From the IMG/VR virus record IMGVR_UViG_3300033995_001164, positions 186,001-250,000 of that record: a stretch of DNA of 64,000 nt, one strand, 5' to 3'. The notes beneath the pieces were generated by a model. That model had not been told where the DNA came from and did not search any database. It was given only the letters and a program-made list of their open reading frames with translations. Position 1 is the stretch's first letter, and every line of letters begins with the position of its first letter. Positions 7,365 through 54,967 of this stretch are shown here, piece by piece. A program made the position numbers and the translations under genes.

Positions 7365-7967
7365 ATGAAAAAAAAAATTTTATTATTCGTTATTGGTGTT
7401 CTAAGTTTAGTTTCAGAATCTTGTATCTCCCAAAAATTTAAAAATGGTGATATCATATTCCAAACATCAAAATCGTCTCAAAGTAAAATGATTCAAATTA
7501 TTACCGAATCAAAATTAACTCATTGTGGTATAATTTTTTATCAAAACGGAAAACCTTACGTATTTGAAGCGGTTCAACCTGTAAAAATAACACCTTTACA
7601 AAAATGGATTAGTCGTGGTTTTAATGAAAAATATATTGTATCTAGAGTTAAACTCCCATTAACTAATAATCAATTAAAGGAAATGTACGGATATTCCAAA
7701 TCTTTACTTGGTAAAAATTATGATATTAAGTTTGAATGGTCGGATAAAAACATGTATTGCTCAGAATTAGTTTATAAAGTATTTGTTGCTGGAGACCGAT
7801 TTATTGGACGAGCAAAAAAATTCTCCGATTACAACTTAAACAATAAAATTGTTAAAGACGCAATCAAGAGAAGATATGGGGATTCTATTAATCTAAATGA
7901 AATGGTTATTACACCTGTTGATATATATCAAAGTTCTGAACTTAATACAATATACGATAATTACTAA
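7365..7967 (+). CDS. YiiX/YebB-like permuted papain (NlpC/P60) amidase
   Basis: GDIIFQTS...THCGII...YDIKFEWSDKNMYCSELVYK (His before Cys); signal peptide; TATCTTTG promoter upstream. Confidence 0.85.
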   Translation: MKKKILLFVIGVLSLVSESCISQKFKNGDIIFQTSKSSQSKMIQIITESKLTHCGIIFYQNGKPYVFEAVQPVKITPLQKWISRGFNEKYIVSRVKLPLTNNQLKEMYGYSKSLLGKNYDIKFEWSDKNMYCSELVYKVFVAGDRFIGRAKKFSDYNLNNKIVKDAIKRRYGDSINLNEMVITPVDIYQSSELNTIYDNY

Positions 7968-16750: not shown

Positions 16751-19567
16751 TTAGGAATTTAGTAACTTATCCAATTCTTTTGAAATTTCTCCTAAAGATT
16801 CTTGTCCATGACCTAAATTAATCATTTGAGCCCCTTCTATTAAGTTATTCTCAACCAACATATTTAAGTTATTAATTCGAGATTCCGGGGTTATTTCCGC
16901 TTCTCCTCCGACTGGTGGAGGTGGAACTGTTTCTTCCCCTGCCGGTGGTAATTCTTCGCCGCCTAAATCGGAGGTTTCAAATTCTCCCCCGCCAAATGAT
17001 GGAGGTGGTTCAGATGTTTCAGTTGAAGCTGTTTGGGTTCCTCCTGAGGTACTACCATAAAGTTTATCGATATTATCAAATAAACCTGTTTTAGTGATAA
17101 CCGTAGCAGTTGCCTTAAGCTCTTCCCCTACCGCTCTTTCAATTCTTTGTTGTTGTAAATCCAAACGAACTTCTTCATCTGACCATCCAAAAATATGTTT
17201 CTTAGCCCATGTTGCTGAAGTCGCTTGAATACCATTTCCTGGGTCCGCAACTAAATCTTTGTATAATAAAACTTTTTCTTTCCAAACGTCAATTTTTAAT
17301 AAATCTGCTTGGGTTGATGGATTACTTAATCCTAATGTGAAATTATCCAATTCGTCTTCAAATCCTAATAAAAATAAATGGACGATTGCAATTTTATTTA
17401 ATTCTGCAACCATACTTTTTTGAATTCTATTAATTGTTCTAGCAAAACGAATATCTTGTAAAGATAAATTTTTACCATCTCCTACAACTTCTTCAAAACC
17501 TAAAAATGCTTTAGGTACACGAAGAGCTGTTAATAGTTTCTTTTGGATATATTCAATATCGGCAATTTCTGAAAGGTTGGTCGCCCCTGGTAATGTAGTA
17601 ATCGGGTCAGGTGCTGAAGGGTCTCTAACTGGGATGAAATAATCTTGGTCTACCGCCATTTGGTTAAACCTCATGTCAACATTACCTGTTTTATTATCTA
17701 CAACCTGTTCTCTTTTAAATTTATTTGCAACTCTTTGTACGTATGCCTCGACATCGTCATCGTTCATATTACCAACAAATACTTTAAACATTCTTCTTTC
17801 AGGTGCTCTTGATGTACGATAAATTAACATCGCATCTTCTGATAGTAATAATTGTTTCCAAATTCTTCTTGCTTTCTCTAACATAGAAGTACCATAAGGA
17901 AGTTTTCTGTCGTCACCTAATAATCTAAAATGACCAATTTCCCATGTTTGGAATTCCATGTTTTTAATCTTCCAAGTAAAATGAAGAGATTTTTTGTCTT
18001 TATCTAATTCTTTAGTTATGTCAGTCGATATTTTTGCACTTACCCCTACTTCATGTCTTTCAATCTCGATTGTTGGTAATTGTTGAACACCTACAATTCC
18101 TTTTTCAGGGTCTAATTTTAAAAAAATAAAGTTATCACCATACTTGCAAGTGTTTCTTGTCCACATTGGTAGGTTAGTGTTAATGTCAAGTGAGTTATTA
18201 AACAAGTCGGCTAATACCCCTTTTATTCTGTTTGACTCTGAATAAATTTGTAATATAAACCCATCTTCATTTGTTGTGGTTGATTCTTCCGCATAAATGT
18301 CTAACGCTGCTGATATTTCAGGAGTGTTATGGGAAAATATAGTATCTGTTGCAAAGTTTTTATATCCGGGAACTGTTAAATCATAAACAGGAATAACTCC
18401 ATTAGGTTCTATTGACACTATTTTATGATTCAAATTAATTGAAGACCCCACACTTTTTGACGTAGAGTATTTTGATTTTTCAATACCATAAGCGTCGAGG
18501 AATGTTGACCAATCTTTGTAACCGGAATTTGTAATATCTCTTTGTAATTTCCTGTATGAAACATTCAACTTTAAAGATGTTTTTTTCAAAGATTTCTCAA
18601 TTCTCGCCGTTTCAATGATATTGTCAAAAGGTATCGAAAAATATGCTGGATTTTTATTACCTTTACGTTTTCCACCCCAAGTCATTTTACCTTTACGTTT
18701 GGCAACTTCAGACATTTTTAATCTATACTCAGGATTAGACCATAATTTTTCATTATTCAATCTTGCATGATATGCTCTATGTTCTGAAATATCCATAATT
18801 AATAAATTTTCAGGAAGATTATTTTTCCCATTAAAATCAATATGGTGTACTTCTTCGTTGTCTTTTATTTCTACTTCATTATACCATTTTGCAATTAAAC
18901 TATGTTCTGATACCCACCCATGGTGTCCTTCATCTTTATTGCAAGTGTAAACCCAATTATAGTTTTGGTTATTATAAAATGATTTACGATAAAACGGCAT
19001 CATAGAATCCCCGTCTTTGAGGTTCATAACTCTCTCAAATGACCCATCTCTTTTCATTAATTGGTGTTCCCATGTTGTGATAATAAATGAACCATCGTCA
19101 AAAATAACTTTATATGTCATTTCATCTCGAGTGTAATGTGCATTTCGAGCCTTTGAGGGTACGACTTTTTTCAAATTGTGGTCATACGAATAAGTGATAA
19201 ATTCGTAATCTCTGCCTTTGTCAGCAAGTTCTTTTATGGTTATAAAACCATCAGGAGTTGCTATTTTTGTGTCTCCGGCGATGCAATATTCCATACTTTC
19301 ATAATCGTATTGTGCCGATAATCTTGACGGTTCATAATATATTGCCTGAGAATATAAATTATTCTCAACTTTTGCCCATTGATTGGTTAAATAAAAGGTT
19401 TGTTGCGCCTGTAACTTTTCTTTCTCGTATTCTTCTTTACTTTTGGTACGTAGTAATTCCTTTTTATCAAACTTAAAAGTTGGATAATCTTGGTTTAATT
19501 GAGAATTAGGCCCAAATGTTTGGGATAATCTCTGCCATACCGTCATATTATTTTGTTGTTCGCTCAT
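16751..19567 (-). CDS. gp20: Portal protein, T4 gp20 family, interrupted by an intein
   Basis: TPEISAALDIYAEE, PYGTSMLEKARRIWKQLLLSEDAMLIYRTSRAPERR, DYFIPVR, DIEYIQKKLLTALRVPKAFL. Confidence 0.93.
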   Translation of the reverse strand: MSEQQNNMTVWQRLSQTFGPNSQLNQDYPTFKFDKKELLRTKSKEEYEKEKLQAQQTFYLTNQWAKVENNLYSQAIYYEPSRLSAQYDYESMEYCIAGDTKIATPDGFITIKELADKGRDYEFITYSYDHNLKKVVPSKARNAHYTRDEMTYKVIFDDGSFIITTWEHQLMKRDGSFERVMNLKDGDSMMPFYRKSFYNNQNYNWVYTCNKDEGHHGWVSEHSLIAKWYNEVEIKDNEEVHHIDFNGKNNLPENLLIMDISEHRAYHARLNNEKLWSNPEYRLKMSEVAKRKGKMTWGGKRKGNKNPAYFSIPFDNIIETARIEKSLKKTSLKLNVSYRKLQRDITNSGYKDWSTFLDAYGIEKSKYSTSKSVGSSINLNHKIVSIEPNGVIPVYDLTVPGYKNFATDTIFSHNTPEISAALDIYAEESTTTNEDGFILQIYSESNRIKGVLADLFNNSLDINTNLPMWTRNTCKYGDNFIFLKLDPEKGIVGVQQLPTIEIERHEVGVSAKISTDITKELDKDKKSLHFTWKIKNMEFQTWEIGHFRLLGDDRKLPYGTSMLEKARRIWKQLLLSEDAMLIYRTSRAPERRMFKVFVGNMNDDDVEAYVQRVANKFKREQVVDNKTGNVDMRFNQMAVDQDYFIPVRDPSAPDPITTLPGATNLSEIADIEYIQKKLLTALRVPKAFLGFEEVVGDGKNLSLQDIRFARTINRIQKSMVAELNKIAIVHLFLLGFEDELDNFTLGLSNPSTQADLLKIDVWKEKVLLYKDLVADPGNGIQATSATWAKKHIFGWSDEEVRLDLQQQRIERAVGEELKATATVITKTGLFDNIDKLYGSTSGGTQTASTETSEPPPSFGGGEFETSDLGGEELPPAGEETVPPPPVGGEAEITPESRINNLNMLVENNLIEGAQMINLGHGQESLGEISKELDKLLNS
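18326..19285 (-). mobile_element. Intein (320 aa) with HNH homing endonuclease in the portal
   Basis: Starts CIAGDTKIATPDG (block A) and ends VYDLTVPGYKNFATDTIFSHN followed by Thr; internal EVHHIDFNGKNNLPENL. Confidence 0.92.
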
Positions 19568-27408: not shown

Positions 27409-27578
27409 AATTTTATTTTTTAATTCAAATTTATTTTATACCTTTGTATTATTCAAATAATATACCAAACCAAAAAATATGTCAATATGTCAGGTTAAAA
27501 AAAACTTACTGACAATTTGTCTAAAAATTAGGATAAGAATAAAATTTGATACACCTTTGTAAAATAAAATTAGAAACT

Positions 27579-29594
27579 ATGAACGACTTAATGGACGACA
27601 ACGACAAATCAGGGAACAAAGCACAAAAACAAGCTATGGATACAAACACACCTGTATTAGACAACTTCAGTAGAGATTTAAATAAACTAGCTGAGGCGGG
27701 TAAATTAGACCCGGTTATTGGTAGAGATGCCGAGATTTTGAGAATCGCACAAATCCTTTCTCGTAGAAAAAAGAATAACCCTATTATCATAGGTGAACCC
27801 GGATGTGGTAAAACCGCATTGGTTGAAGGTTTGGCTATGAAAATTGTGAGTGGAGAATGTCCAAGAAACTTAGTGGACAAAAGAATCGTGAACCTTGATT
27901 TAACTTCAGTTGTTGCTGGTACAAAGTATCGTGGACAATTTGAGGAAAGAATGAAAGTGATTATCGAGGAACTTAGTGCTAATCCAAATATCATTGTGTT
28001 TATCGATGAGATTCACACATTGGTTGGTTCCGGTAATTCTTCAGGTTCAATGGATGGTTCAAACATCTTCAAACCGGCACTTGCCCGTGGAGAGGTTCAA
28101 TGTATTGGTGCGACAACTCTTGATGAGTTCCGTAAGAACATTGAGAAAGACGGAGCCTTGGAAAGAAGATTCCAAAAAGTAATTGTGGAGCCATCCACAG
28201 TTGAAGAAACAATCGAAATCCTTAAGAATGTTCGTGATAAATACGAATCATACCACAAAGTGTTGTATAGTGACGAAGTTGTGGAAACTTGTGTTAAGTT
28301 GGCTGACCGTTACATCACCGACCGTGAGTTCCCGGATAAAGCATTTGACATCTTAGATGAGGTTGGTGCTCGTATGCAAACCGAGATTAAAGTTCCTGAT
28401 GTTATTGAGGAATTAAAAAAGAAAGCCGCTGAGATTAAGATTGAAAAAATGGAAGTGGTTAAAAAACAAAACTACGAACAAGCAGCACAACTTAGAGATA
28501 AGGAGAAAAAGTTATTGATTAAACTTGAGGCGGAAAAAGATAAGTTTGCAAAACAAATGGATTTGGAGAAACAAACTATTGTTCTTGAAACCGTATATCA
28601 AGTTGTGTCAAGTATGACTAAAATCCCTGTGAGTAAAATGGATGCTGATGATTCCAAAGCGTTGATGAATTTAGATAAATCAATCATGGGTAAAGTGATT
28701 GGTCAGGATGCTGCTGTTGTTAAGATTGCAAAATCAATCAAGAGAAACCGTTTGGGTATCAAAGACCCTAACAGACCTATTGGTTCATTTATTTTCTTAG
28801 GTTCAACCGGTGTTGGTAAAACTCACTTGGCCAAACAATTAGCTAAAGAGATGTTTGGAACAGAAGATTCACTTATCCGTGTGGATATGTCAGAATACCA
28901 AGAGAAACACACCATCTCTAAATTGGTTGGAGCACCTCCGGGATATGTTGGTTACGAAGAAGGAGGTTTATTAACTGAGAAAGTTAAAAACAAACCATAT
29001 TCTGTAATCTTATTTGATGAGGTTGAAAAAGCTCACAAAGATGTTTTCACGGTATTACTTCAAATATTAGATGATGGACACGTAACCGATAGTTTAGGTA
29101 GAAAGATTAACTTCAAGAATACCTTAATCATCCTTACATCTAACTTAGGTGTTAAGAAATTACAAGACTTCGGTACTGGTATTGGATTCTCTAATAACTC
29201 TTACGCCGACGAAGAAGCTAAGAAAGAAATCTTGATGAAAGAGATGAAGAATTTCTTTTCTCCTGAGTTCATTAACCGTATTGATGACACTATTGTCTTT
29301 AATTCATTAACTCCTGAAGATATCGATAAAATCACCGATATTGAGTTAAAGAAATTAATGACTCGTCTTGGTGAGATGAAATACACCGTAACCTACGATG
29401 ATGAGGTTGTTAAATACCTATCTAAAATTGGATACGATGAAGTATATGGTGCAAGACCATTGAAGAGAGCAATCCAAGACAAAATTGAGGATTTGTTATC
29501 CGAAGAAGTATTAACCGGTAAAATGGTTGAGGGTAAATCCTACCAAATCAAAATGAAGGGTGAGGACATCACAATTCAGAAAAAAGGAAAATAA
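27579..29594 (+). CDS. clpC: ClpC-type AAA+ unfoldase lacking the N-terminal Clp-repeat domain
   Basis: GEPGCGKT/DEIH and GSTGVGKT/DEVEK ATPase modules, single UVR M-domain, TGIGF ClpP-docking loop. Confidence 0.9.
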   Translation: MNDLMDDNDKSGNKAQKQAMDTNTPVLDNFSRDLNKLAEAGKLDPVIGRDAEILRIAQILSRRKKNNPIIIGEPGCGKTALVEGLAMKIVSGECPRNLVDKRIVNLDLTSVVAGTKYRGQFEERMKVIIEELSANPNIIVFIDEIHTLVGSGNSSGSMDGSNIFKPALARGEVQCIGATTLDEFRKNIEKDGALERRFQKVIVEPSTVEETIEILKNVRDKYESYHKVLYSDEVVETCVKLADRYITDREFPDKAFDILDEVGARMQTEIKVPDVIEELKKKAAEIKIEKMEVVKKQNYEQAAQLRDKEKKLLIKLEAEKDKFAKQMDLEKQTIVLETVYQVVSSMTKIPVSKMDADDSKALMNLDKSIMGKVIGQDAAVVKIAKSIKRNRLGIKDPNRPIGSFIFLGSTGVGKTHLAKQLAKEMFGTEDSLIRVDMSEYQEKHTISKLVGAPPGYVGYEEGGLLTEKVKNKPYSVILFDEVEKAHKDVFTVLLQILDDGHVTDSLGRKINFKNTLIILTSNLGVKKLQDFGTGIGFSNNSYADEEAKKEILMKEMKNFFSPEFINRIDDTIVFNSLTPEDIDKITDIELKKLMTRLGEMKYTVTYDDEVVKYLSKIGYDEVYGARPLKRAIQDKIEDLLSEEVLTGKMVEGKSYQIKMKGEDITIQKKGK

Positions 29595-32101: not shown

Positions 32102-32511
32102 GGGGATGAAATGGAATTGACTGACATATCTACTTATTTAGGGCACGTAGTGAGAAGTTTCCTATCACTTAAATCTATGGATGACAAAATTATAAATGGC
32201 AACATTTTAAACAAAATGGCTCTAGTAGGTCTTGTACGTCAAGATGAGCTTGTGAACGTAGCGTAAGCAAACACACATTGGGGTCGACGGATATATGTAC
32301 CTTGCAACAGAAATATCTTAAGGTGTGATACCACCCGAAGAGTGTCAAGGTCTCGTTTGAGGGTCTACCTATTAAAGTGAACCTCCCACAGTTGTAGGTA
32401 ATGATGGAAAAATTAAAACCTTCTTATTTGTCAGTTGAGAATTAATTGAATAAACGTGTAGACCTAAACACTTAGGATGGACAACACCCGATTTCGAAAT
32501 CGGCATCTCCA
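32102..32511 (+). ncRNA. ssrA: tmRNA; tag reading frame 32198-32266 encodes (A)GNILNKMALVGLVRQDELVNVA
   Basis: 5' GGGGATG pairs with 3' CATCTCC-A including the G3.U70 pair; GGAATTGAC D-loop; GGAC...TTCGAA T-arm; resume context ATAAAT-GGC. No encoded CCA. Confidence 0.9.
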
Positions 32512-32520
32512 CTTTAATAA

Positions 32521-43235: not shown

Positions 43236-43240
43236 AGTTG

Positions 43241-43316
43241 TTGATAAGGTGGGTTTCGAACCCACGGACTCTCGGCAGTTACCCACCGAGTGTTTCGCCA
43301 ACAAAACTTCTTACCA
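43241..43316 (-). ncRNA. tRNA-like RNA 1 with GNRA hairpin in place of the anticodon loop
   Basis: TGGTAAG/CTTATCA-A acceptor, GTTT/AAAC D-stem, GTGGG-TTCGAAA-CCCAC T-arm; central CTCGGTGG-GTAA-CTGCCGAG. Confidence 0.7.
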
Positions 43317-46993: not shown

Positions 46994-47641
46994 TTATTTT
47001 AACCATTTTCTAATGGCGTTATCACTAACACCATATTTACGACCTGTTCCTTTATACCCAAGATTAATTACATCTTGTTTTATTTGTTCTATGGATGGTC
47101 TCTCAACTTTTCTATTTTGTTTATTTGTACATTTGATACATTTATCACTTTTTTTATCTTTTGTACCACCACACTCACAATGGTATTTAATTTTATTAGA
47201 TTTCCCGGAATATGTGCTAGTTTGGGAGTGACAATTAGGACATAAAAATCTTAAATTTTCTATTCTATTGTCATTATTAACCCCATTAATATGGTCTAAA
47301 TGTAGGCTAATATTTTTACCATTCCATTCCCCATTATTGCCACATTCGACACATTTATACTCAAGTAAATTTTTCTTTAATATTCTATTTTTAATTTTAC
47401 CTCTCGCAAATGTTGAATCTTTAACAAAAACGTCCTCGTCTAATCTAACTTCTTTAGGTCCTGTACCATAATAATTATATTTAGGAATCTCTAAACCCAA
47501 TTTAATAATTCTGTCTTTAATATTTCTATAACCACCCGACCCATTTGGTGATAAATTAAATAATAAAATAACCTCTCTCATTGATTTTGAATTATTTAAT
47601 ATTTCAAATAATTCTTCTTTTGTTACAGTTTTTAAATTCAT
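46994..47641 (-). CDS. HNH homing endonuclease
   Basis: CVECG...LHLDHINGVNNDNRIENLRFLCPNCHSQT; same C-terminal YGVSDNAIRKW as 42276..43073. Confidence 0.9.
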   Translation of the reverse strand: MNLKTVTKEELFEILNNSKSMREVILLFNLSPNGSGGYRNIKDRIIKLGLEIPKYNYYGTGPKEVRLDEDVFVKDSTFARGKIKNRILKKNLLEYKCVECGNNGEWNGKNISLHLDHINGVNNDNRIENLRFLCPNCHSQTSTYSGKSNKIKYHCECGGTKDKKSDKCIKCTNKQNRKVERPSIEQIKQDVINLGYKGTGRKYGVSDNAIRKWLK

Positions 47642-47711
47642 ATACTTTATTTTAATATAAATATCTTAAAAAACTAAAAAGGGTCACCATAACCTATGTT
47701 TCACCAAAAAT

Positions 47712-47872
47712 AATAACATAATTTTTTGTAGTCCCCCGCCGGGTAACCCCCCTACTTTTTCACACAACCCGGATGCCTCCGAATCTAATTTTCTATTTCA
47801 CCTCTTACTAAGAAACGCGTTTTCCATTCAGAGATTCAAGCCGATTTTCGCGAGTTAAAAAACTATGTTATT
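47712..47872 (-). ncRNA. Candidate structured RNA, 161 nt
   Basis: 16-bp closing helix with one G.U pair on the minus strand; CCGGGT/ACCCGG and CGCG/CGCG helices. Confidence 0.5.
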
Positions 47873-47874
47873 TG

Positions 47875-47944
47875 AGGTCTCGGGGGGAATCGAACCCACT
47901 CTATTAGTTTTGCAGACTAACCGGTCGCCACGACCAACAAGACC
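47875..47944 (-). tRNA. tRNA-Cys (GCA)
   Basis: TTAGT-CTGCAAA-ACTAA; U73; short D-arm. Confidence 0.9.
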
Positions 47945-48017
47945 ATTTAACCTACGACCTAAAGAACAGGAATTGTATCCATATCATTCTATGAGCACTG
48001 TAGGTTTTCTATTTTAA

Positions 48018-48089
48018 AAAACACCCGGACTGACCTTTTCTCCCTTGTCTGTACGTGTTATCCGGCCGTGACTACGTAGCGGGTGTTTT
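48018..48089 (-). ncRNA. Candidate small structured RNA, 72 nt
   Basis: AAAACACCC/GGGTGTTTT closing helix and CCGGA/TCCGG. Confidence 0.35.
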
Positions 48090-48254
48090 AATAAATCACA
48101 CATCCATCAAGATTGGGATAATTAGAAGGGCTATTTATTTTCAAACTATTTCATTCCTCCCTAAAACTAACTTACTCAACAAACATAACACTTCTTGTAG
48201 TGTTACATTTTCTAACTTTAACGCTGTTTGTCTTTCTATGTGTAAATTTAATTT

Positions 48255-48641
48255 TTATGTGTCAATTCCAAAAAACTCCTTACCGGTTGATTCTTGTAAT
48301 CCATACATATATTCTTCCGCTTCTTCTTCAGAATCAAAATACGTGCTATGTGATGTCTTATCAGATAAATTAACGGTTATTTGAGATTTTTGTCGAATTT
48401 CTTTAGTTTCTTCATTGATAAGATACCATTTGTATTCACTTAAATATTCCGTAGTTCTTCGGTTTATTCCGGAATTATAATTACTCCACCCTTCAGGTGT
48501 TTCTTCTGTCATACCATACTTAATCCCTAAAAATGTTTTAGGTTTTGATGGTACTTTATCAAACCACTTATAACCTGTTTCTTTTTCCGGTTGGAAACTC
48601 ATTGACGCCACTCTATCTACTTGGAAATAATATCTACCCAT
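48255..48641 (-). CDS. Hypothetical protein
   Basis: 128-aa ORF. Confidence 0.55.
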   Translation of the reverse strand: MGRYYFQVDRVASMSFQPEKETGYKWFDKVPSKPKTFLGIKYGMTEETPEGWSNYNSGINRRTTEYLSEYKWYLINEETKEIRQKSQITVNLSDKTSHSTYFDSEEEAEEYMYGLQESTGKEFFGIDT

Positions 48642-48801
48642 ATTTGTTTATTTAATATCTTCTCTAAAATATGACATCTCAACATTGTATAATTCACAAA
48701 TTCTTTCTGTGGACATTTTGGAGAATAAACTTCCCAAACAATGGATAAAATATCCATCAATAAACCACTTTAATCTTTGTTTTGCTTCGTATTCTGTCAT
48801 C

Positions 48802-49044
48802 TTAATATCCTATTTCATCTTTAATCTTCCATTGTTCATCAATGGGGATTCTTTCAACCCTTTCAACCGGAACAAATCCGTCCAATCTTTTTTCTTTAAC
48901 ATCCTCAAAATGTTCAATGGTGTCCAAATAAAACCCGAACTGATATCGAATGTATTGGAACTTTTCACCATCCCAATATGCCATGTGGTTGTTTCTACAG
49001 AAACCATTATACCACCCTTCAACCATATCTTTTTTTAATATCAT
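48802..49044 (-). CDS. Hypothetical protein
   Basis: 80-aa ORF after host-type promoter (TACCTTTG near 49096-49103). Confidence 0.55.
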   Translation of the reverse strand: MILKKDMVEGWYNGFCRNNHMAYWDGEKFQYIRYQFGFYLDTIEHFEDVKEKRLDGFVPVERVERIPIDEQWKIKDEIGY

Positions 49045-49142
49045 AATTTCTATTTTTAATCCTCTTACACCAAGAGTTAATCTTTAATTTTTTTACAAAG
49101 GTAGGAATAAATTTTTAACCAACCAAATTAAAAATTAGAAAA

Positions 49143-49305
49143 TTATATAGGAAGTTTTACTTTACTTAAAATATTATTTGAAACGTGAGTATAAACTTTC
49201 TAAGAAAGGTTTAACATGCGATAAATAATTATTTCCAGTTTTAGGGGAGTAGTTCAGATATATAAACTTTTCTTCACAAATCTTTATAATTTTTTGGTTT
49301 TTCAT
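49143..49305 (-). pseudogene. Internally deleted tyrosine recombinase (integron-integrase-like)
   Basis: N-terminal MKNQKIIKICEEKFIYLNYSPKTGNNYLSHVKPFLESL (SAM-like YS..T...Y motif) is joined out of frame to C-terminal YTHVSNNILSKVKLPI (catalytic-Tyr motif). Confidence 0.75.
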
Positions 49306-49340
49306 AATATAACTTACTAATAATTAATGTTTTACACAAT

Positions 49341-49369
49341 ATTACATATATAACATAGTTATGTGTAAT
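49341..49369 (+). other. attI-like site
   Basis: GTTATGT core at 49358, just upstream of the integrase start; its flank is complementary to the R'' of the first attC. Confidence 0.55.
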
Positions 49370-49385
49370 AAAATAAAAATTATGA

Positions 49386-49598
49386 TTATCCTATATCACA
49401 TTTGGTTATTAATCCTTTATCAATCTCCAAGTTTATTCTATCAAATCGTAAATCCATTGTGATTACATAATTATTAGAATCTTCTCTTGTTATTCTAACT
49501 TTATAATCATTTTCTTTACATAATTCTGTTCCTGATTCTTTATTCATTCCGATTAAAGATTCTAATAATTCATTACTTCCGTTTCTATTTCGTCCCAT
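49386..49598 (-). CDS. Cassette 1 gene: peptidase-inhibitor I78/potato-inhibitor-like protein
   Basis: VITMDLRFDRINLEIDKGLITKCDIG matches the TMDyr.dR...D...I....G pattern. Confidence 0.6.
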   Translation of the reverse strand: MGRNRNGSNELLESLIGMNKESGTELCKENDYKVRITREDSNNYVITMDLRFDRINLEIDKGLITKCDIG

Positions 49599-49632
49599 AA
49601 TTTTAAATTTGTATAATTTTTATTTTACATAC

Positions 49633-49686
49633 ACATAACAAATGATAAACAACATTAAAACGATTGTTTATCATCGGACGTTATAA
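49633..49686 (+). mobile_element. attC site 1 (54 nt)
   Basis: ACATAAC-AA-ATGATAAAC-loop-GTTTATCAT-CGGAC-GTTATAA. Confidence 0.8.
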
Positions 49687-49701
49687 AACATTAAAACGAT
49701 T

Positions 49702-49831
49702 TTATAACAAAGTATAAAAGAAATGCTCCAAAAGTTCGACATTGGAAATCCTCTGTTACGGAGTTGAACCGCATCTACCTTGCAAGATAGTTGTTACACA
49801 ACCGCACTTCTTTTATACTCAATCGTTATGT
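49702..49831 (+). mobile_element. attC site 2 (130 nt), closing an ORF-less cassette
   Basis: TTATAAC-AA-AGTATAAAAGAA...TTCTTTTATACT-CAATC-GTTATGT. Confidence 0.8.
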
Positions 49832-49846
49832 TTAATTTTAAGAAAT

Positions 49847-50116
49847 TTATTTGTTTTTTAATTTGTCTTGAAGTATTTTGTTTACATCAAATTTAGTCCA
49901 AGAAGTTTGTTCTTCAAGTGGTTTTCGTTCTGTTGGTGGCGTTGGTACATCATCAATAACCATATAGTGACTAAATGTTAAATGAGACAAACTTCTTCCC
50001 ATTTGTCCTTTCAATTTACTTGGAAACATATGACCATTTGTTCTATTTACCCACCAACAAAATAATTCTTCATTTGGTAAATCTTGTTCTGAATTTATCT
50101 CTATCCATTCTTTCAT
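49847..50116 (-). CDS. Cassette 3 gene: DUF551-like hypothetical protein
   Basis: Likely start MKEWIEINSEQDLP; ends with SHYM...PTPP pattern. Confidence 0.5.
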   Translation of the reverse strand: MKEWIEINSEQDLPNEELFCWWVNRTNGHMFPSKLKGQMGRSLSHLTFSHYMVIDDVPTPPTERKPLEEQTSWTKFDVNKILQDKLKNK

Positions 50117-50155
50117 ATAATATATTTTTAAGTTGTATAAATTTTTTAAAACTAA

Positions 50156-50209
50156 ACATAACAAAGTGTAAAAAACATTAAAACAATTTTTTACACCCAA
50201 CCGTTATGT
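50156..50209 (+). mobile_element. attC site 3 (54 nt)
   Basis: ACATAAC-AAA-GTGTAAAAA-loop-TTTTTACAC-CCAACC-GTTATGT; loop nearly identical to attC1. Confidence 0.8.
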
Positions 50210-50226
50210 GTAATAAAAAACTAAAA

Positions 50227-50451
50227 TTAAACTACCTCAACTTTATACAGTGTTCTATTATCGAAGTTTTCTTTTGAAAACCCCTTTATTACATCATTAT
50301 TTTTGTGTGAAATTGTTTCAATGTCATCTATGTTGTTTTTGATGTCATTCAGTGTTTTACTCAATCTACTCCAGTAAATTTGTTCACACAAAAATAAACC
50401 AGTCCATTGTAGGTTTTTCAAAATAAAATCTGTTAATTTAGTTCGTTTCAT
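50227..50451 (-). CDS. Cassette 4 gene: hypothetical protein
   Basis: 74-aa ORF between attC3 and attC4. Confidence 0.55.
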   Translation of the reverse strand: MKRTKLTDFILKNLQWTGLFLCEQIYWSRLSKTLNDIKNNIDDIETISHKNNDVIKGFSKENFDNRTLYKVEVV

Positions 50452-50489
50452 ATATTTAAAAGTTTAATTTTTTTACGTTTTTTACATAC

Positions 50490-50512
50490 ACATAACAAGG
50501 TGTATATGTAAT
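50490..50512 (+). mobile_element. Truncated attC site 4 (left arm only)
   Basis: ACATAAC-AAGGTGTATA with no right arm; same upstream TTTACATACACATAACAA as attC1. Confidence 0.55.
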
Positions 50513-50517
50513 AATTT

Positions 50518-50703
50518 TTACAAAGATACGATTATATTCCTACTCCGGAGTGTTTTTCTTAAAAGAGATAATCTTTTTCTATGATTGACATATTGGTCAC
50601 CATCATTAGCTTTATGTCCTTTAAAAATTGATTCAGTTATCTCACATTCCAATTTAATAATTTCACTTATTAGCTCTTCTGTTGTTAAATCACTCTCAAT
50701 CAT
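50518..50703 (-). CDS. Hypothetical protein
   Basis: Coupled ORF. Confidence 0.5.
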   Translation of the reverse strand: MIESDLTTEELISEIIKLECEITESIFKGHKANDGDQYVNHRKRLSLLRKTLRSRNIIVSL

Positions 50704-51023
50704 ATTTTCTCAAATTCGTCTTCAAATCCGTACCATTCCTCACCTTCTTCATCTTCGTACCAATATGTGTATGCCCGGTCGTATTTATGCCAATCAATTC
50801 TAGTCAATTCAACCTCATTTCCACTATTTTTATCTCTAACCACATTACCAACTTGAAATGCTTGTGGTACGTAATCATTGATTGTTTCACTTTTAATAAT
50901 CAATTCTCCAACACTTTTAACCTCATCAGTTTGGATATTGGTATAGTTTCCTTCGGATGATAATTCCCACCCATTGTCATACAACCAATTCGTAAAATCT
51001 AAAATTTCGTTTTCTAATAACAT
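50700..51023 (-). CDS. Hypothetical protein
   Basis: ORF after a TATCTTTG promoter element near 51046-51053. Confidence 0.55.
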   Translation of the reverse strand: MLLENEILDFTNWLYDNGWELSSEGNYTNIQTDEVKSVGELIIKSETINDYVPQAFQVGNVVRDKNSGNEVELTRIDWHKYDRAYTYWYEDEEGEEWYGFEDEFEKI

Positions 51024-51063
51024 AATATATCAGTTTTTGTGGGGACAAAGATACTACGATTTT

Positions 51064-51339
51064 TTAATCTACCAAATTTTTATCTTTATTTTCCAAATAT
51101 TTTCTTGACTCACTACACATTTTTTCCAAAACCTCTAATGATTTGAGATTCTTAAAGATGATTGTTAGAATTTCCTCACTTTCACCACCTAACACATCAA
51201 CACCAACCTCATTCGGTTCTGACAATGAATCAATCGTAATGAATGGTAATTTAACACTGTTCTCAATTCCCATTCCAAATGATAATTCACCATCTCCGGC
51301 CACAATAACTCTCTCACGTTGTTTTTTTACTTCTGACAT
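51064..51339 (-). CDS. Hypothetical protein
   Basis: 91-aa ORF. Confidence 0.55.
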   Translation of the reverse strand: MSEVKKQRERVIVAGDGELSFGMGIENSVKLPFITIDSLSEPNEVGVDVLGGESEEILTIIFKNLKSLEVLEKMCSESRKYLENKDKNLVD

Positions 51340-51344
51340 AATAT

Positions 51345-52187
51345 TTAATTTTCTGTTTCTAATCTTTTAATAACGTCCTTAATATTAATATATGATGTTA
51401 AAATTGTTGGTAACCCAAGAAGAGCATTACAAAAATCAAACATATATCTATAAGTTGAGAATACACTTCCCACACTCACCTTATTGTACATTACGTAGTA
51501 TGTTAATAATGCTGTCACACTTCCATAAACAATACCTTGAATCCAAATTGAAAACTTAGCATCAATACTTGACATTTTAAGTGATAAGAACTGACCTCTC
51601 TTTAATAAATTATTAATTGAGGCAATTTTTCTTGTACCAATCACATCAGTTTGTTCTTCAGACAAATCATTATATTTACTTGTAATGTTGGCAATTTTTG
51701 GTGAATAATATGCTGTTGCCCCCAAGATTAATATTGTTGTAATAATCAAGAATCCAACAATCGGTAAACTTACCATTGCCAAGAAGTAGATGGCGCCAAC
51801 CAAACCAATAATCGTCTGTATTACCAATAACATATCTCGTTCAAAAAACAGGACAATATAGTGCATTAAGGTTAATCTTCCGTTGATTTTTGTTGTCTCA
51901 ACATCATTATCAAGTTGATTACTTGTTTCAATAGAGGCAAATCTCCTATAAATCCCGGAGAATACTTTAGTGTCATAAATTTTACTGATGTACCCGAAGA
52001 ACATAATTGATGCAAATGTAGAAACCAAATACCATATGTATGAATAATCTTTGGTAATTAAGTGGTCAATTGCATTACCCAAAACTTTGGGATACATAAC
52101 CATCAATATCGCATTAATCATGAACAATGAATATGAAAATATTATTGATTTCCAATTCTCACTAAACATTATTTTTAACTTATCCAT
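51345..52187 (-). CDS. ABC-transporter-type six-helix transmembrane domain, no ATPase
   Basis: Six hydrophobic helices; YPKVLGNAID, YDTKVFSGIY, GSVFSTYRYMFDF patterns. Confidence 0.7.
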   Translation of the reverse strand: MDKLKIMFSENWKSIIFSYSLFMINAILMVMYPKVLGNAIDHLITKDYSYIWYLVSTFASIMFFGYISKIYDTKVFSGIYRRFASIETSNQLDNDVETTKINGRLTLMHYIVLFFERDMLLVIQTIIGLVGAIYFLAMVSLPIVGFLIITTILILGATAYYSPKIANITSKYNDLSEEQTDVIGTRKIASINNLLKRGQFLSLKMSSIDAKFSIWIQGIVYGSVTALLTYYVMYNKVSVGSVFSTYRYMFDFCNALLGLPTILTSYINIKDVIKRLETEN

Positions 52188-52256
52188 ATCTTATCTTTTT
52201 TGATTTTGACAAAGATACAACTAAAATTTAATCTACCAAATAATTATGAATTTTCT

Positions 52257-52484
52257 TTAAATTGTTTTCCAAGTCTTTTTAATGGTTTTTGAAAAGTTAA
52301 CAATTTTTTGACAGTCTTCACAATTTACATTTTCATTTGTTTTTACAAATTGACCACAAGTCATAAAATCCCCATCAAGTGTTAAACCACATAAAGTGTA
52401 ATCACTTCCAACCGGTGATGTAAAATGAATTTCATTTTTGAATATATCATCACCATTACCAATGAATTTTATTTTATTTGACAT
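52257..52484 (-). CDS. Small Cys/His (zinc-finger-like) protein
   Basis: H...CG...C...CEDC spacing. Confidence 0.5.
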   Translation of the reverse strand: MSNKIKFIGNGDDIFKNEIHFTSPVGSDYTLCGLTLDGDFMTCGQFVKTNENVNCEDCQKIVNFSKTIKKTWKTI

Positions 52485-52687
52485 TATTCCTCACTTTTTT
52501 TAGGTCCCTTGAAATCACAATCAAGACAAACGTATCTCTGTTCTTCAATGCTCCAATCCATATTATAATGTTGACATTCCTTAGGTTTTAAATATTTTTG
52601 TTGTTTCTTGTATTCCGACACCACTTTAAGTGCTGTTTTATACTGACTTTCTGTTATCATAGTTAAAAGAATAAGTAGGGTCTCCAT
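52484..52687 (-). CDS. Small zinc-ribbon protein
   Basis: ECQH...YVCLDC. Confidence 0.45.
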   Translation of the reverse strand: METLLILLTMITESQYKTALKVVSEYKKQQKYLKPKECQHYNMDWSIEEQRYVCLDCDFKGPKKSEE

Positions 52688-53172
52688 TCATCAGGGATTT
52701 CGTGATGAACTTGTTTCATTAACATCAAGTAATGAGGTCTCCTTGGTTGAGGAATTTCCTTACCGTATTCCTCCAACGTCAAATTGGACTTCTCACCGTT
52801 ACACCTTCTACAAGCGGTAACTAAGTTGTCCCAACTGTCTTTCCCCCCCTTAGATTGGGGTATTACGTGGTCCAAAGTTAGCGTCTTTCTATTATTGTCT
52901 CCACAATATACACACTCAAAGTTATCTCTACGATAAACATTCTCTCTACTTAAAGGAACTTTTTGAATTATCTGATTCACATATTTGTAGACCCGAATAA
53001 TTGAAGGTTTTTTGATATCCAATTCAGGATTCACTAATTTGAATGATTCCGGATGTTCATTTATAACGTCAGCATTACCCTTATAAGAAATGACGAAAGC
53101 CCTCTCTGTGGAAATAATACTCCTCGCCATAAAACTTGAATCCAAAACCAAAGTTTTTTGGTAACTACTCAC
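52663..53172 (-). CDS. HNH endonuclease (McrA-like)
   Basis: RENVYRRDNFECVYCG...TLDHVIPQSKGGKDSWDNLVTACRRCNGEK. Confidence 0.9.
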   Translation of the reverse strand: MSSYQKTLVLDSSFMARSIISTERAFVISYKGNADVINEHPESFKLVNPELDIKKPSIIRVYKYVNQIIQKVPLSRENVYRRDNFECVYCGDNNRKTLTLDHVIPQSKGGKDSWDNLVTACRRCNGEKSNLTLEEYGKEIPQPRRPHYLMLMKQVHHEIPDEWRPYLFF

Positions 53173-54829: not shown

Positions 54830-54967
54830 AATTAAAGGTAGGACTCGAACCTACGACCTGATTTCCTTTTCCACTTAGTTCGGTATTGGATGTGACTCCG
54901 TCCCTTATTCGTTGTTTTTCTCTTTCGAGTTAGGTATGTCTGTTCTAACCAACTGAACTACTTTAAT
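54830..54967 (-). ncRNA. tRNA-like RNA 6 (138 nt)
   Basis: ATTAAAG/CTTTAAT; TAGTTCAGTTGGTTAGAACA D-arm; AGGTC-GTAGG-TTCGAGT-CCTAC; about 80-nt purine-rich insert replaces the anticodon arm. Confidence 0.75.

What the first reader, a model, noticed from the sequence alone, without database searches (positions are those of the whole stretch)
49143..50512. A reverse-orientation integron inside a jumbo phage
Seen: an integrase remnant pointing away from an attI-like GTT site, then attC1-3 (R''-L''-loop-L'-R', each with a 2-3 nt left and 5-6 nt right spacer) and a truncated attC4. Every cassette's left end is the reverse complement of its own R'': GTTATGTGTA/TACACATAAC, GTTATAAAA/TTTTATAAC, GTTATGTTTA/TAAACATAAC, GTTATGTGTA/TACACATAAC. 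This is the signature of cassettes that circularise. The cassette ORFs face the integrase, as in the Treponema denticola integron (established), so phage promoters upstream on the minus strand can express them. Inference: this phage lineage sampled the Bacteroidota cassette pool with its own integrase.
Basis: partly seen in the sequence, partly recalled or inferred. Interest (0 to 1): 0.88.

Follow-up and report, generated by a model that had tools for sequence, protein, structure and literature searches.

The report
Decayed integron-like gene-cassette array in phage
This stretch of a 309-kb phage genome is the broken remains of an integron-like gene-capture device: a deleted recombinase gene, its docking site and four small gene cassettes. 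Intact versions prove to be common in related environmental phages and use a recombinase that is not a classical integron integrase.

Summary

**What the window holds (49146-50530)**
- A recombinase remnant. The first 38 and last 18 codons of a 267-aa tyrosine recombinase survive; about 210 codons between them are deleted.
- A conserved attI-like junction 53 nt upstream of that gene.
- Four cassettes: three with ORFs and one ORF-less. They are bounded by attC-like sites of the form ATAAC-3 nt-stem-loop-stem-6 nt-GTTAK.

**Comparative evidence**
- The site family occurs in at least 120 IMG/VR stretches, and its stem covaries.
- Cassettes are exchanged between contexts with breakpoints at GTTA.
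- In 77 loci fetched by the recombinase protein alone, 196 sites lie upstream of the gene in one orientation. Two lie opposite and 7 lie downstream.
- 63 of 69 distinct upstream regions carry the attI-like motif.

**Differences from a canonical integron**
- The recombinase is Xer/IntI-like but lacks the IntI-specific insert and scores below the curated IntI cut-offs.
- Cassette ORFs are antisense to the canonical orientation, so each site lies upstream of its ORF. Some sites carry a Bacteroidota-type promoter.
- One site of this type, Polaribacter phage P12002L attC1, was published as a predicted attC, but IntI1 did not recombine it.

The window copy cannot recombine itself, because no intact recombinase lies in these 64 kb. 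Capture from a bacterial cassette pool is not shown.

The parts
49174..49305 (-). 43-codon ORF. Codons 1-38 (49192-49305) are the N-terminus of the tyrosine recombinase; the last 5 codons are out-of-frame sequence created by the deletion.
   Evidence: tblastn of the L076 recombinase: residues 1-38, 87% identity, E 5e-17. The ORF matches the first 35-41 residues of about 80 intact homologues.
49146..49199 (-). C-terminal 18 codons of the same recombinase, including the catalytic-tyrosine motif YTHV. They lie in a different frame. Residues ~39-249 are deleted.
   Evidence: tblastn residues 250-267, 72% identity; frame translation.
49338..49362 (+). attI-like junction, TTACATATATAACATA|GTTAT. The G of GTTAT is at 49358, 53 nt upstream of the recombinase start codon.
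   Evidence: Alignment of ten recombinase-proximal regions: ATATA and AGTTA are invariant and sequences diverge after GTTA. The motif is present 45-60 nt upstream of the start in 63 of 69 distinct recombinase loci.
49359..49680 (-). Cassette A. ORF 49386-49598 (70 aa, no family) plus its site: R'' 49630-49639, AAA, L'' 49643-49652, loop CATTAAAACGA 49653-49663, L' 49664-49673, spacer TCGGAC, R' G at 49680.
   Evidence: CM hit 49623-49696, E 2e-15; flanking inverted repeats I9 and I14; no Pfam or PHROG hit.
49681..49825 (-). Cassette B, ORF-less. It consists of a bare R-box hairpin (49680-49708, loop CATTAAAACGA) and a long-loop site: L'' 49712-49722, an 85-nt terminal region, L' 49808-49818, spacer TCAATC, G at 49825.
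   Evidence: inverted repeat I16; it belongs to a recurrent ~124-nt length class of the site; fold z-score -4.2; not a tRNA or any Rfam family.
49826..50203 (-). Cassette C. ORF 49847-50116 (89 aa, no family) plus its site: R'' 50153-50162, AAA, L'' 50166-50175, loop CATTAAAACAA 50176-50186, L' 50187-50196, spacer CCAACC, G at 50203.
   Evidence: CM hit 50146-50219, E 1e-12; 26-nt flanking inverted repeat, 92% complementary (I1).
50204..50530 (-). Cassette D. ORF 50227-50451 (74 aa, no family), R'' 50487-50496, then the left half of a promoter-bearing long-loop site (50492-50530). On the minus strand, TATCTTTG (50528-50521) matches the Bacteroidota -7 box TAnnTTTG and overlaps the stop codon of the upstream gene.
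   Evidence: homology of 50492-50530 to full promoter-bearing sites of L010 and L074; 13 of 198 long-loop sites carry TTTG-N17-22-TAnnTTTG in the ORF-sense strand and none in the other strand.
49090..49113 (+). Left copy of a 24-nt direct repeat (TTTTTACAAAGGTA...) that brackets the whole module. The right copy lies at 50515-50538.
   Evidence: family D8 (83% identity). Relatives L228, L251 and L290 lack the module between the same two flanking genes.

Best explanation
The region is a degenerate copy of a phage-borne, integron-like gene-capture platform.

**The intact platform.** It is seen in many related environmental phage contigs. It consists of a ~267-aa Xer/IntI-type tyrosine recombinase gene and a conserved attI-like site about 55 nt upstream of it. 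Beyond that lies an array of up to ten or more small cassettes within 8 kb.

**The cassettes.** Each cassette is one small ORF, usually an orphan, plus one imperfect-palindrome site: R''(..ATAAC), 3 nt, L'', a loop of 11 to ~170 nt, L', 5-6 nt, R'(GTTAK..).

**Proposed mechanism (inferred).**
- The strand complementary to ATAAC-AAA folds as single-stranded DNA. It forms an R helix, a 3-nt bulge, an L helix and a terminal loop.
- The recombinase exchanges strands at GTT.
- Cassettes are therefore excised as circles and reinserted at the attI-like site or at other sites. In a circle, a cassette's own two ends pair to complete the R helix.

**Differences from classical integrons.** The ORF is antisense to the site, so the site lies 5' of its ORF. 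Some sites carry a host-type promoter in their loop, so cassettes can bring their own promoter and are read towards the recombinase gene.

**State of the window copy.** The recombinase gene has lost residues ~39-249, so this copy is fixed unless a recombinase is supplied from elsewhere. The whole 1.4-kb module lies between two conserved genes that are near-adjacent in relatives. It is bracketed by a 24-nt promoter-like direct repeat, which suggests arrival by ordinary recombination.

**Shown versus inferred.** Shown: the sequence anatomy, the linkage and polarity of recombinase and sites, the breakpoints at GTTA, stem covariation, and the strand asymmetry. Inferred: that this recombinase acts on these sites, that the substrate is folded single-stranded DNA, and that circles form.
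For: **Site family**
- At least 120 IMG/VR stretches match the motif.
- All 9 stem pairs show compensatory changes, and 98% of cells are paired.
- The family is absent from Rfam.

**Linkage to the recombinase**
- A tyrosine recombinase (PF13495 + PF00589) is the second most frequent large protein family near sites.
- In 77 loci retrieved by that protein alone, the model's 92 hits are all on one strand and 91 lie upstream.
- Counting short- and long-loop sites together, 196 lie upstream in the array orientation. Two lie opposite and 7 lie downstream. 47 of 53 loci with enough upstream sequence have an array.

**attI-like site**
- The motif is present in 63 of 69 distinct upstream regions, 45-60 nt from the start codon. 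Sequences diverge beyond GTTA.

**Site-specific exchange**
- In 8 of 9 pairs sharing the right-hand cassette, identity ends 2-4 nt left of the G.
- In 32 of 36 pairs sharing the left-hand cassette, the inner hairpin stays with that cassette. Divergence then falls in the spacer or 3-6 nt after the G.

**Cassette ends**
- A cassette's own ends are more complementary than non-self pairs (0 of 5000 permutations reach the observed mean).

**Folding strand**
- G.T wobbles favour one strand 19 to 3, in phages and in bacterial chromosomes alike. In the bacterial chromosomes that strand is mostly antisense to the flanking genes.
- The predicted DNA fold has an R helix, a 3-nt bulge and an L helix.

**The window itself**
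- Recombinase remnant.
- Relatives lack the array at this locus.

**Cargo**
- 200 array ORFs fall into 118 families. Only 2 of 98 representatives scanned have a Pfam hit.
Against: - No experiment links this recombinase to these sites.
- The recombinase lacks the IntI-specific insert that in VchIntIA contacts the extrahelical bases (role of the insert recalled from memory). It scores below the curated cut-offs of every NCBIfam model.
- The one site of this type tested in the literature, P12002L_attC1, was not recombined by IntI1 (PMC9892861).
- The strand that folds best is the mRNA-sense strand in phages. An RNA role as terminator, attenuator or stabiliser therefore cannot be excluded there.
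- A few chimeric hairpins (L076, L094) show that exchanges also occur inside the conserved loop, which looks like ordinary homologous recombination.
- About 40% of the strictly defined cassettes do not have complementary ends. They may contain undetected internal sites.
- Breakpoints can only be bracketed to about 8 nt, because C-GTTA is invariant.
Confidence: 0.75

Rival explanations
1. PeSL-like regulatory cassettes. The repeats would be composite terminator-promoter modules between small early genes. Cassette shuffling would come from ordinary homologous recombination between these conserved intergenic sequences, as in T4-type phages. The nearby recombinase would be unrelated.
For: - In ORF-sense RNA each hairpin is followed by UUUGUUAU.
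- Some long-loop versions contain a Bacteroidota-type promoter pointing at the next ORF.
- The whole module is bracketed by a promoter-like direct repeat (D8).
- Chimeric hairpins joined within the loop exist.
- The PeSL precedent includes detected mini-circles (PMC2839356, PMC4122927).
Against: - Breakpoints cluster at GTTA, and the inner hairpin travels with one neighbour only (32 of 36 against 1 of 9).
- The polarity and linkage with a tyrosine recombinase and a conserved attI-like junction are strict.
- The same element in bacterial chromosomes mostly lies in the opposite orientation to the flanking genes, yet keeps the same folding strand.
- The stems are AT-rich with an 11-nt loop, so they are poor intrinsic terminators. 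The terminator scan does not call them.
- The upstream leader motif is not a genome-wide promoter.
Confidence: 0.12
2. RNA-level element. The hairpins and the long 5'/3' pairing around each ORF would act in the polycistronic transcript as processing, stability or translation-control signals, bound by a phage or host RNA-binding protein that recognises the conserved loop.
For: - The strand with G.U-compatible pairing is the ORF-sense strand in phages.
- The 11-nt loop is conserved while the stems covary.
- Each ORF is enclosed by an 18-26 nt stem.
- The region lies inside a tRNA gene cluster, where RNA processing is intense.
Against: - In bacterial chromosomes the element mostly follows genes in the opposite orientation, so the favoured strand is not their mRNA there.
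- Most sites in the arrays have long, non-conserved loops.
- An RNA role does not explain the GTTA breakpoints or the linked recombinase and attI-like site.
Confidence: 0.08
3. Chance or decayed repeats of no function in AT-rich intergenic DNA.
For: - The window has 29-36% G+C.
- Many short inverted repeats arise by chance: 85 pairs in 1.9 kb.
Against: - CM E-values of 1e-12 to 1e-15 in the window.
- Hundreds of copies with compensatory stem changes in unrelated contigs.
- Fixed orientation relative to ORFs, 132 against 6.
Confidence: 0.01

Closest known systems
Integrons (IntI + attI + attC cassette arrays), including sedentary chromosomal integrons and CALINs
   Same: - A tyrosine recombinase gene reads away from a fixed primary site, followed by an array of small, mostly orphan cassettes.
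- Sites have R''-L''-loop-L'-R' symmetry with AAC/GTT cores and loops of variable length.
- The 6-nt spacer before GTT resembles the classical TCAAGC-GTTAG (recalled from memory).
- Module boundaries fall at GTT.
- A cassette's two ends are complementary.
- One strand folds preferentially.
   Different: - The recombinase lacks the IntI-specific insert and fails the curated IntI thresholds.
- ORFs are antisense to the canonical orientation, so the site is 5' of its ORF.
- Some sites carry promoters.
- One large subfamily has an invariant 11-nt loop.
- The asymmetry is a 3-nt bulge between the R and L helices, not extrahelical bases inside the L box.
- The host is a virulent-type jumbo phage.
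- IntI1 did not recombine the one site of this type that was tested (PMC9892861).
CALINs in phage genomes (Qi et al. 2023, PMC9892861), in particular Polaribacter phage P12002L attC1
   Same: P12002L_attC1, as given by the published primers, is a member of this very site family. It has the loop CATTAAAACGA and corresponds to L317 29995-30069. It lies between antisense DNA methyltransferase genes.
   Different: - That study found sites only. It reported no recombinase, no attI-like site and no family.
- attC1 was the one site of six for which IntI1 recombination was not obtained.
- Here the sites are tied to a dedicated phage recombinase and to hundreds of copies.
PeSL mobile regulatory cassettes of T4-type phages (PMC2839356, PMC4122927)
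   Same: - Small orphan ORFs lie in hyperplastic regions of large phages.
- They are separated by conserved stem-loop and promoter modules.
- Indels between relatives fall at these modules.
- Circular intermediates are proposed and were detected for PeSLs.
   Different: - PeSLs recombine by homology and have no dedicated recombinase or primary site.
- Here there is a linked tyrosine recombinase, an attI-like junction and a fixed breakpoint.
Xer/dif-type module exchange (pdif modules of Acinetobacter plasmids; XerA of archaea). This comparison is from memory and is a lead only.
   Same: - The recombinase's best matches are XerA, XerC and XerD.
- Modules are flanked by inversely oriented half-sites.
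   Different: - The sites here are 60-200 nt hairpin-type sites with covarying stems, not 28-bp duplex dif sites.
- They form one-directional arrays next to the recombinase gene.

Membership tests
Integron (sensu IntegronFinder) | An IntI, meaning a tyrosine recombinase with the integron-specific additional domain near the catalytic domain | tested here: not met
   - The intact homologues are 266-271 aa.
- The alignment to VchIntIA (2a3v) splits into query 30-171 / IntI 37-173 and query 213-259 / IntI 263-309, so about 48 aa are missing.
- TIGR02249 scores 154-161 bits against a cut-off of 265. PRK15417 scores 105-107 against 435.
- The window copy is a deletion remnant.
Integron (sensu IntegronFinder) | attC sites: imperfect palindromes R''-L''-L'-R' with conserved AAC/GTT, 57-141 nt, variable loop, extrahelical bases | tested here: inconclusive
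   - The symmetry, the cores, a length of 60-200 nt and the variable loops are present.
- A 3-nt bulge takes the place of classical extrahelical bases.
- The IntegronFinder and HattCI models could not be run here.
- HattCI alone called P12002L_attC1 according to PMC9892861.
Integron (sensu IntegronFinder) | A primary site attI next to the recombinase gene, where cassettes are joined at GTT | tested here: met
   A conserved TATATAnnnTA|GTTAK lies 45-60 nt upstream of the start codon in 63 of 69 distinct loci. Sequence diverges after GTTA. The window copy is at 49338-49362.
Integron (sensu IntegronFinder) | Cassettes move as units bounded at G|TT of R', each carrying its own attC | tested here: met
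   Breakpoint mapping in 45 informative pairs, with examples. A cassette's own ends are complementary. This is comparative evidence only; no circles were observed.
Integron (sensu IntegronFinder) | Canonical cassette orientation (ORF followed by attC) and expression from a Pc promoter at the integrase end | tested here: not met
   ORFs are antisense to the site in 132 of 138 right-hand neighbours and in 26 of 27 cassettes. Where promoters are found, they lie inside the site loops and point towards the recombinase.
Integron (sensu IntegronFinder) | Recombination of folded bottom-strand attC by the integrase | not testable with these tools
   Only indirect support exists: wobble asymmetry of 19 to 3 and predicted DNA folds. 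According to the literature, IntI1 failed on P12002L_attC1.
PeSL regulatory cassettes | A composite terminator plus strong host promoter in every intergenic module, with exchange by homologous recombination at variable points | tested here: not met
   Only 13 of 198 long-loop sites match the host promoter consensus, and none of the short ones was seen to. No terminator is called. Breakpoints are fixed at GTTA.
Rfam Flavo-1 or any other Rfam family | A match to the covariance model | tested here: not met
   No hit was found in the window at E<=10 or in bacterial loci at E<=0.1.

The most novel reading that the evidence does not exclude
A previously undescribed class of integron-like gene-capture systems may be native to phages of Bacteroidota, many of them jumbo phages.

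- It would be built on a short Xer-type recombinase that lacks the IntI insert, so it could be convergent with, or basal to, bacterial integrons.
- Its cassettes would carry the recombination site, and sometimes a promoter, upstream of the ORF.
- The same sites scattered singly after ordinary genes in Bacteroidota chromosomes would then be entry points for gene exchange between phage and host.
Probability: 0.5. Interest if true: 0.9.

Novelty: new variant of a known kind. Interest (0 to 1): 0.8.

Why it matters
**Known background.** Integrons are the textbook bacterial device for capturing and shuffling genes. They are defined by a specialised integrase. In phages, only imported bacterial integrons or integrase-less attC clusters have been reported.

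**What this adds.**
- A phage lineage carries its own recombinase-linked cassette platform. It is abundant in metagenomes: 226 IMG/VR stretches and more than 120 protein clusters above 82% identity.
- This offers a concrete mechanism for how the orphan-gene regions of large phages turn over.
- It would widen the definition of integron-like systems beyond IntI.
- It would explain why a published phage attC was inert with IntI1.
- It gives a testable recombinase and site pair with a simple 60-nt substrate.
- The cargo is almost wholly unannotated small proteins, plus DNA methyltransferases near the arrays. That makes it a ready-made pool of candidate host-takeover or counter-defence genes.

Tried and rejected
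- **Rfam.** Gathering and permissive searches of the window and of bacterial copies gave no Flavo-1 or other family.
- **tRNA searches.** ARAGORN and Rfam do not call the 85-nt insert of the site at 49712-49818 as a tRNA. The T-arm-like stretch I read by eye stays unconfirmed.
- **The 43-aa ORF against protein libraries.** Pfam, PHROGs and PDB searches gave nothing. BLASTP against one recombinase (L034) gave nothing either. I was ready to reject the 'integrase remnant' until nucleotide homology to the 5' ends of other recombinase genes appeared. Direct comparison then settled it.
- **Cassette A as a peptidase-inhibitor I78-like protein.** This was my recollection of the family; there is no Pfam support.
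- **The leader motif AAAWTTATACAA as a genome-wide phage promoter.** It occurs only at the cassettes.
- **Close relatives in GenBank phages.** There are none. Only Cellulophaga phi39:1, Polaribacter P12002L and two huge uncultured phages carry single or few sites.
- **Relatives with the intact recombinase at the same locus (between f61 and g80).** None were found.
- **Outer 21-nt inverted repeat around the whole array (I8).** It is 81% complementary in AT-rich DNA, so I did not rely on it.
- **Literature searches.** Searches for the loop sequence and for phage integron-like systems found no description of this system.
- **Not determined.**
  - Whether the 309-kb source genome has an intact recombinase elsewhere.
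  - The phylogenetic position of the recombinase relative to IntI and Xer.
  - Recombinase-linked arrays in bacterial genomes.
Full report
**1. The observation**

On the + strand, the region 49350-50510 contains repeated units. Each unit is [arm' ATAAC] AAA [10-bp stem, 11-nt loop CATTAAAACRA, stem] 6 nt [GTTAT arm].

The complementarity extends to 18-26 nt around each ORF (I1, I9, I14, I17).

All ORFs are on the minus strand. A covariance model built from copies found elsewhere scores the two complete units at E 2e-15 and 1e-12. It finds nothing else significant in the 64 kb.

The window is part of a tailed phage. It encodes a major head protein, a portal protein and a large terminase, plus 23 tRNAs and a tmRNA. 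It is identical to parts of a 309-kb IMG/VR contig.

**2. The repeat is a widespread, structured element**

In 93 distinct copies, all nine stem pairs show compensatory double changes and 98% of cells are paired. The loop and the ATAAC/GTTA cores stay fixed.

No Rfam family matches, including Flavo-1.

Besides the short-loop form there are at least 198 distinct long-loop forms. They run 75-200 nt, with length classes near 87 and 124 nt, and have the same cores and covarying two-tier stems. The site at 49704-49829 belongs to the 124-nt class.

The element also occurs in three other settings:
- Cellulophaga phage phi39:1 and two huge uncultured phages.
- Polaribacter phage P12002L.
- Bacteroidota chromosomes, as single copies placed mostly right after the stop codon of ordinary genes such as a peptidase, a dehydrogenase, a sulfatase and eCIS effectors.

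**3. Which strand and which molecule**

In phages the flanking ORFs are antisense to the ATAAC-AAA orientation, 132 against 6. In the bacterial chromosomes they are mostly sense.

In both settings, stem mismatches are G.T wobbles on the same strand, the complement of ATAAC-AAA: 19 against 3. A strand preference that ignores gene orientation argues for a DNA-level hairpin rather than an mRNA element.

Folded as DNA, that strand gives a 6-9 bp R helix, a 3-nt bulge, an 11-12 bp L helix and the loop.

**4. Cassettes are exchanged at GTTA**

The same right-hand cassette is found behind different inner hairpins and different left neighbours. The same left-hand cassette, with its hairpin and spacer, is followed by four to seven different right neighbours.

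Over 45 informative pairs:
- Identity ends 2-4 nt left of the G in 8 of 9 right-sharing pairs.
- Identity ends 3-6 nt after the G (20 pairs) or in the spacer (12 pairs) in 32 of 36 left-sharing pairs.

The inner hairpin therefore belongs to the cassette that ends in ATAAC, and the junction is at the R' core. This is the integron cassette geometry.

A cassette's own two ends are more complementary than non-self pairs (0 of 5000 permutations reach the observed mean). About 40% of strictly defined cassettes do not show this, probably because they contain undetected long-loop sites.

**5. A dedicated recombinase and primary site**

I clustered proteins near the sites. The second most common family was a 266-271 aa tyrosine recombinase with Pfam domains PF13495 and PF00589.

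Loci fetched by this protein alone (226 stretches, 80 kept) show a strict arrangement:
- All 92 model hits are on one strand, and 91 lie upstream of the gene.
- With long-loop sites included, 196 lie upstream in the array orientation, 2 opposite and 7 downstream.
- 47 of 53 loci with enough upstream sequence have an array, with a median of 3 and a maximum of 10 sites within 8 kb.

In 63 of 69 distinct upstream regions a conserved TATATAnnnTA|GTTAK lies 45-60 nt before the start codon. Beyond GTTA the sequence differs from locus to locus. This is what an attI-like primary site should look like.

The protein family is abundant. More than 120 clusters share over 82% identity, they occur on contigs up to 386 kb, and they are annotated only as XerD. 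Upstream genes are runs of 45-145-aa ORFs without Pfam hits.

**6. The window copy**

Positions 49305-49192 encode residues 1-38 of this recombinase (87% identity, E 5e-17). Positions 49199-49146 encode residues 250-267 in another frame. Residues ~39-249 are deleted. No other recombinase fragment lies in the window.

The attI-like junction lies at 49338-49362. Four cassettes follow:
- A, 49359-49680.
- B, 49681-49825, which is ORF-less.
- C, 49826-50203.
- D, 50204 onward.

Cassette D ends in the left half of a promoter-bearing long-loop site. On the minus strand this half-site supplies TATCTTTG, a match to the Bacteroidota -7 box, upstream of the array.

Close relatives have the two flanking genes near-adjacent, with other content between them and no array. 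The 1.4-kb module is bracketed by a 24-nt direct repeat (D8).

The three cassette ORFs have no family hit and no homologue in any other fetched locus.

**7. Comparison with known systems**

The layout and the junction logic are those of an integron, but membership fails on its defining protein:
- The recombinase aligns to VchIntIA in two blocks and lacks about 48 aa between them, where IntI has its extra domain.
- It scores below every curated NCBIfam cut-off. The best matches are XerA_Arch/integron integrase at 167-195 bits against a cut-off of 220, and TIGR02249 at 154-161 bits against 265.

The cassette ORFs are inverted relative to the site, so the site sits upstream of its ORF. Thirteen of 198 long-loop sites carry a full TTTG-N-TAnnTTTG promoter in the ORF-sense strand, and none in the other strand.

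Integrase-less attC clusters in phages have been published (PMC9892861). The primers given there show that P12002L_attC1 is a member of this family. It was the single site for which IntI1 recombination was not obtained.

PeSL cassettes of T4-type phages are the closest functional analogue without a recombinase (PMC2839356, PMC4122927). The fixed breakpoints and the recombinase linkage argue against a purely PeSL-like, homology-driven process. Occasional loop-to-loop chimeras show that such events also occur.

I found no paper describing the recombinase-linked system. The library searched is incomplete.

**8. Cargo**

Two hundred ORFs inside arrays fall into 118 families with a median length near 80 aa. 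Only 2 of 98 representatives scanned have a Pfam hit: YopX and an ADP-ribosyltransferase domain. DNA methyltransferases are the commonest large genes near arrays.

**9. Verdict**

Three corrections apply:
- The recombinase is not an IntI.
- It is the ORFs that are reversed.
- The window copy is an inactive fragment.

That cassettes were drawn from a bacterial pool remains an open inference.

Noticed in passing
window 43240-43316 (-): ARAGORN calls a tRNA with a four-base anticodon (gtaa), meaning an 8-nt anticodon loop. It lies next to tRNA-Leu(taa) and could be a frameshift-suppressor-type tRNA.
   Followed up: no
window 54830-54967 (-): Rfam calls a 138-nt tRNA here, about twice the normal length, and ARAGORN does not list it. 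It may contain an intron or insert.
   Followed up: no
window 32102-32514 (+): A phage-encoded tmRNA, 50.6 bits against a gathering score of 47.
   Followed up: no
window 16751-19567 (-): The 938-aa portal protein carries an HNH endonuclease domain at residues ~195-280, ahead of the portal domain. This may be a homing-endonuclease fusion or an intein-like insert.
   Followed up: no
window 27546-29594 (+): A 682-aa protein matches a PHROG annotated as ATP-dependent protease at E 1e-238.
   Followed up: no
L251 11460-11750; L228 3600-3960; L290 12940-13300: In relatives that lack the array, the spacer between the two flanking genes holds a conserved non-coding stretch of about 250 nt. It has G+C-rich hairpin-like segments and may be a small RNA. 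L290 has one extra 70-aa ORF there.
   Followed up: partly
L126 1163-4680 (Algibacter MAG), L165: Single copies of the site stand before successive genes at an eCIS-type locus next to an AAA ATPase. At least two of these genes carry an eCIS-core domain. Here the outer arms pair within one site, GCCTATAAC...GTTATAGGC.
   Followed up: partly
L102, long-loop site at reverse-strand position 7949: The loop of one long site contains sequences that read like reverse-complemented tRNA T-arms. The window's site at 49712-49818 also has a T-arm-like stretch when read by eye. Neither is called as a tRNA.
   Followed up: partly
L076 9162-9190; L094 (reverse strand, about 3410): There are chimeric hairpins whose two arms come from different sites joined within the conserved loop. 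This is evidence of occasional loop-to-loop recombination and deletion.
   Followed up: partly
L240 10001-14000; L245: The 169-aa gene used as an anchor (window 52663-53172) is present in up to five tandem diverged copies in some relatives.
   Followed up: no
window 46994-47641 (-): A 215-aa HNH homing-endonuclease-like gene lies between tRNA genes. It is the only part of 47000-53000 with DNA similarity to GenBank phages, namely T4-like phages and others.
   Followed up: no
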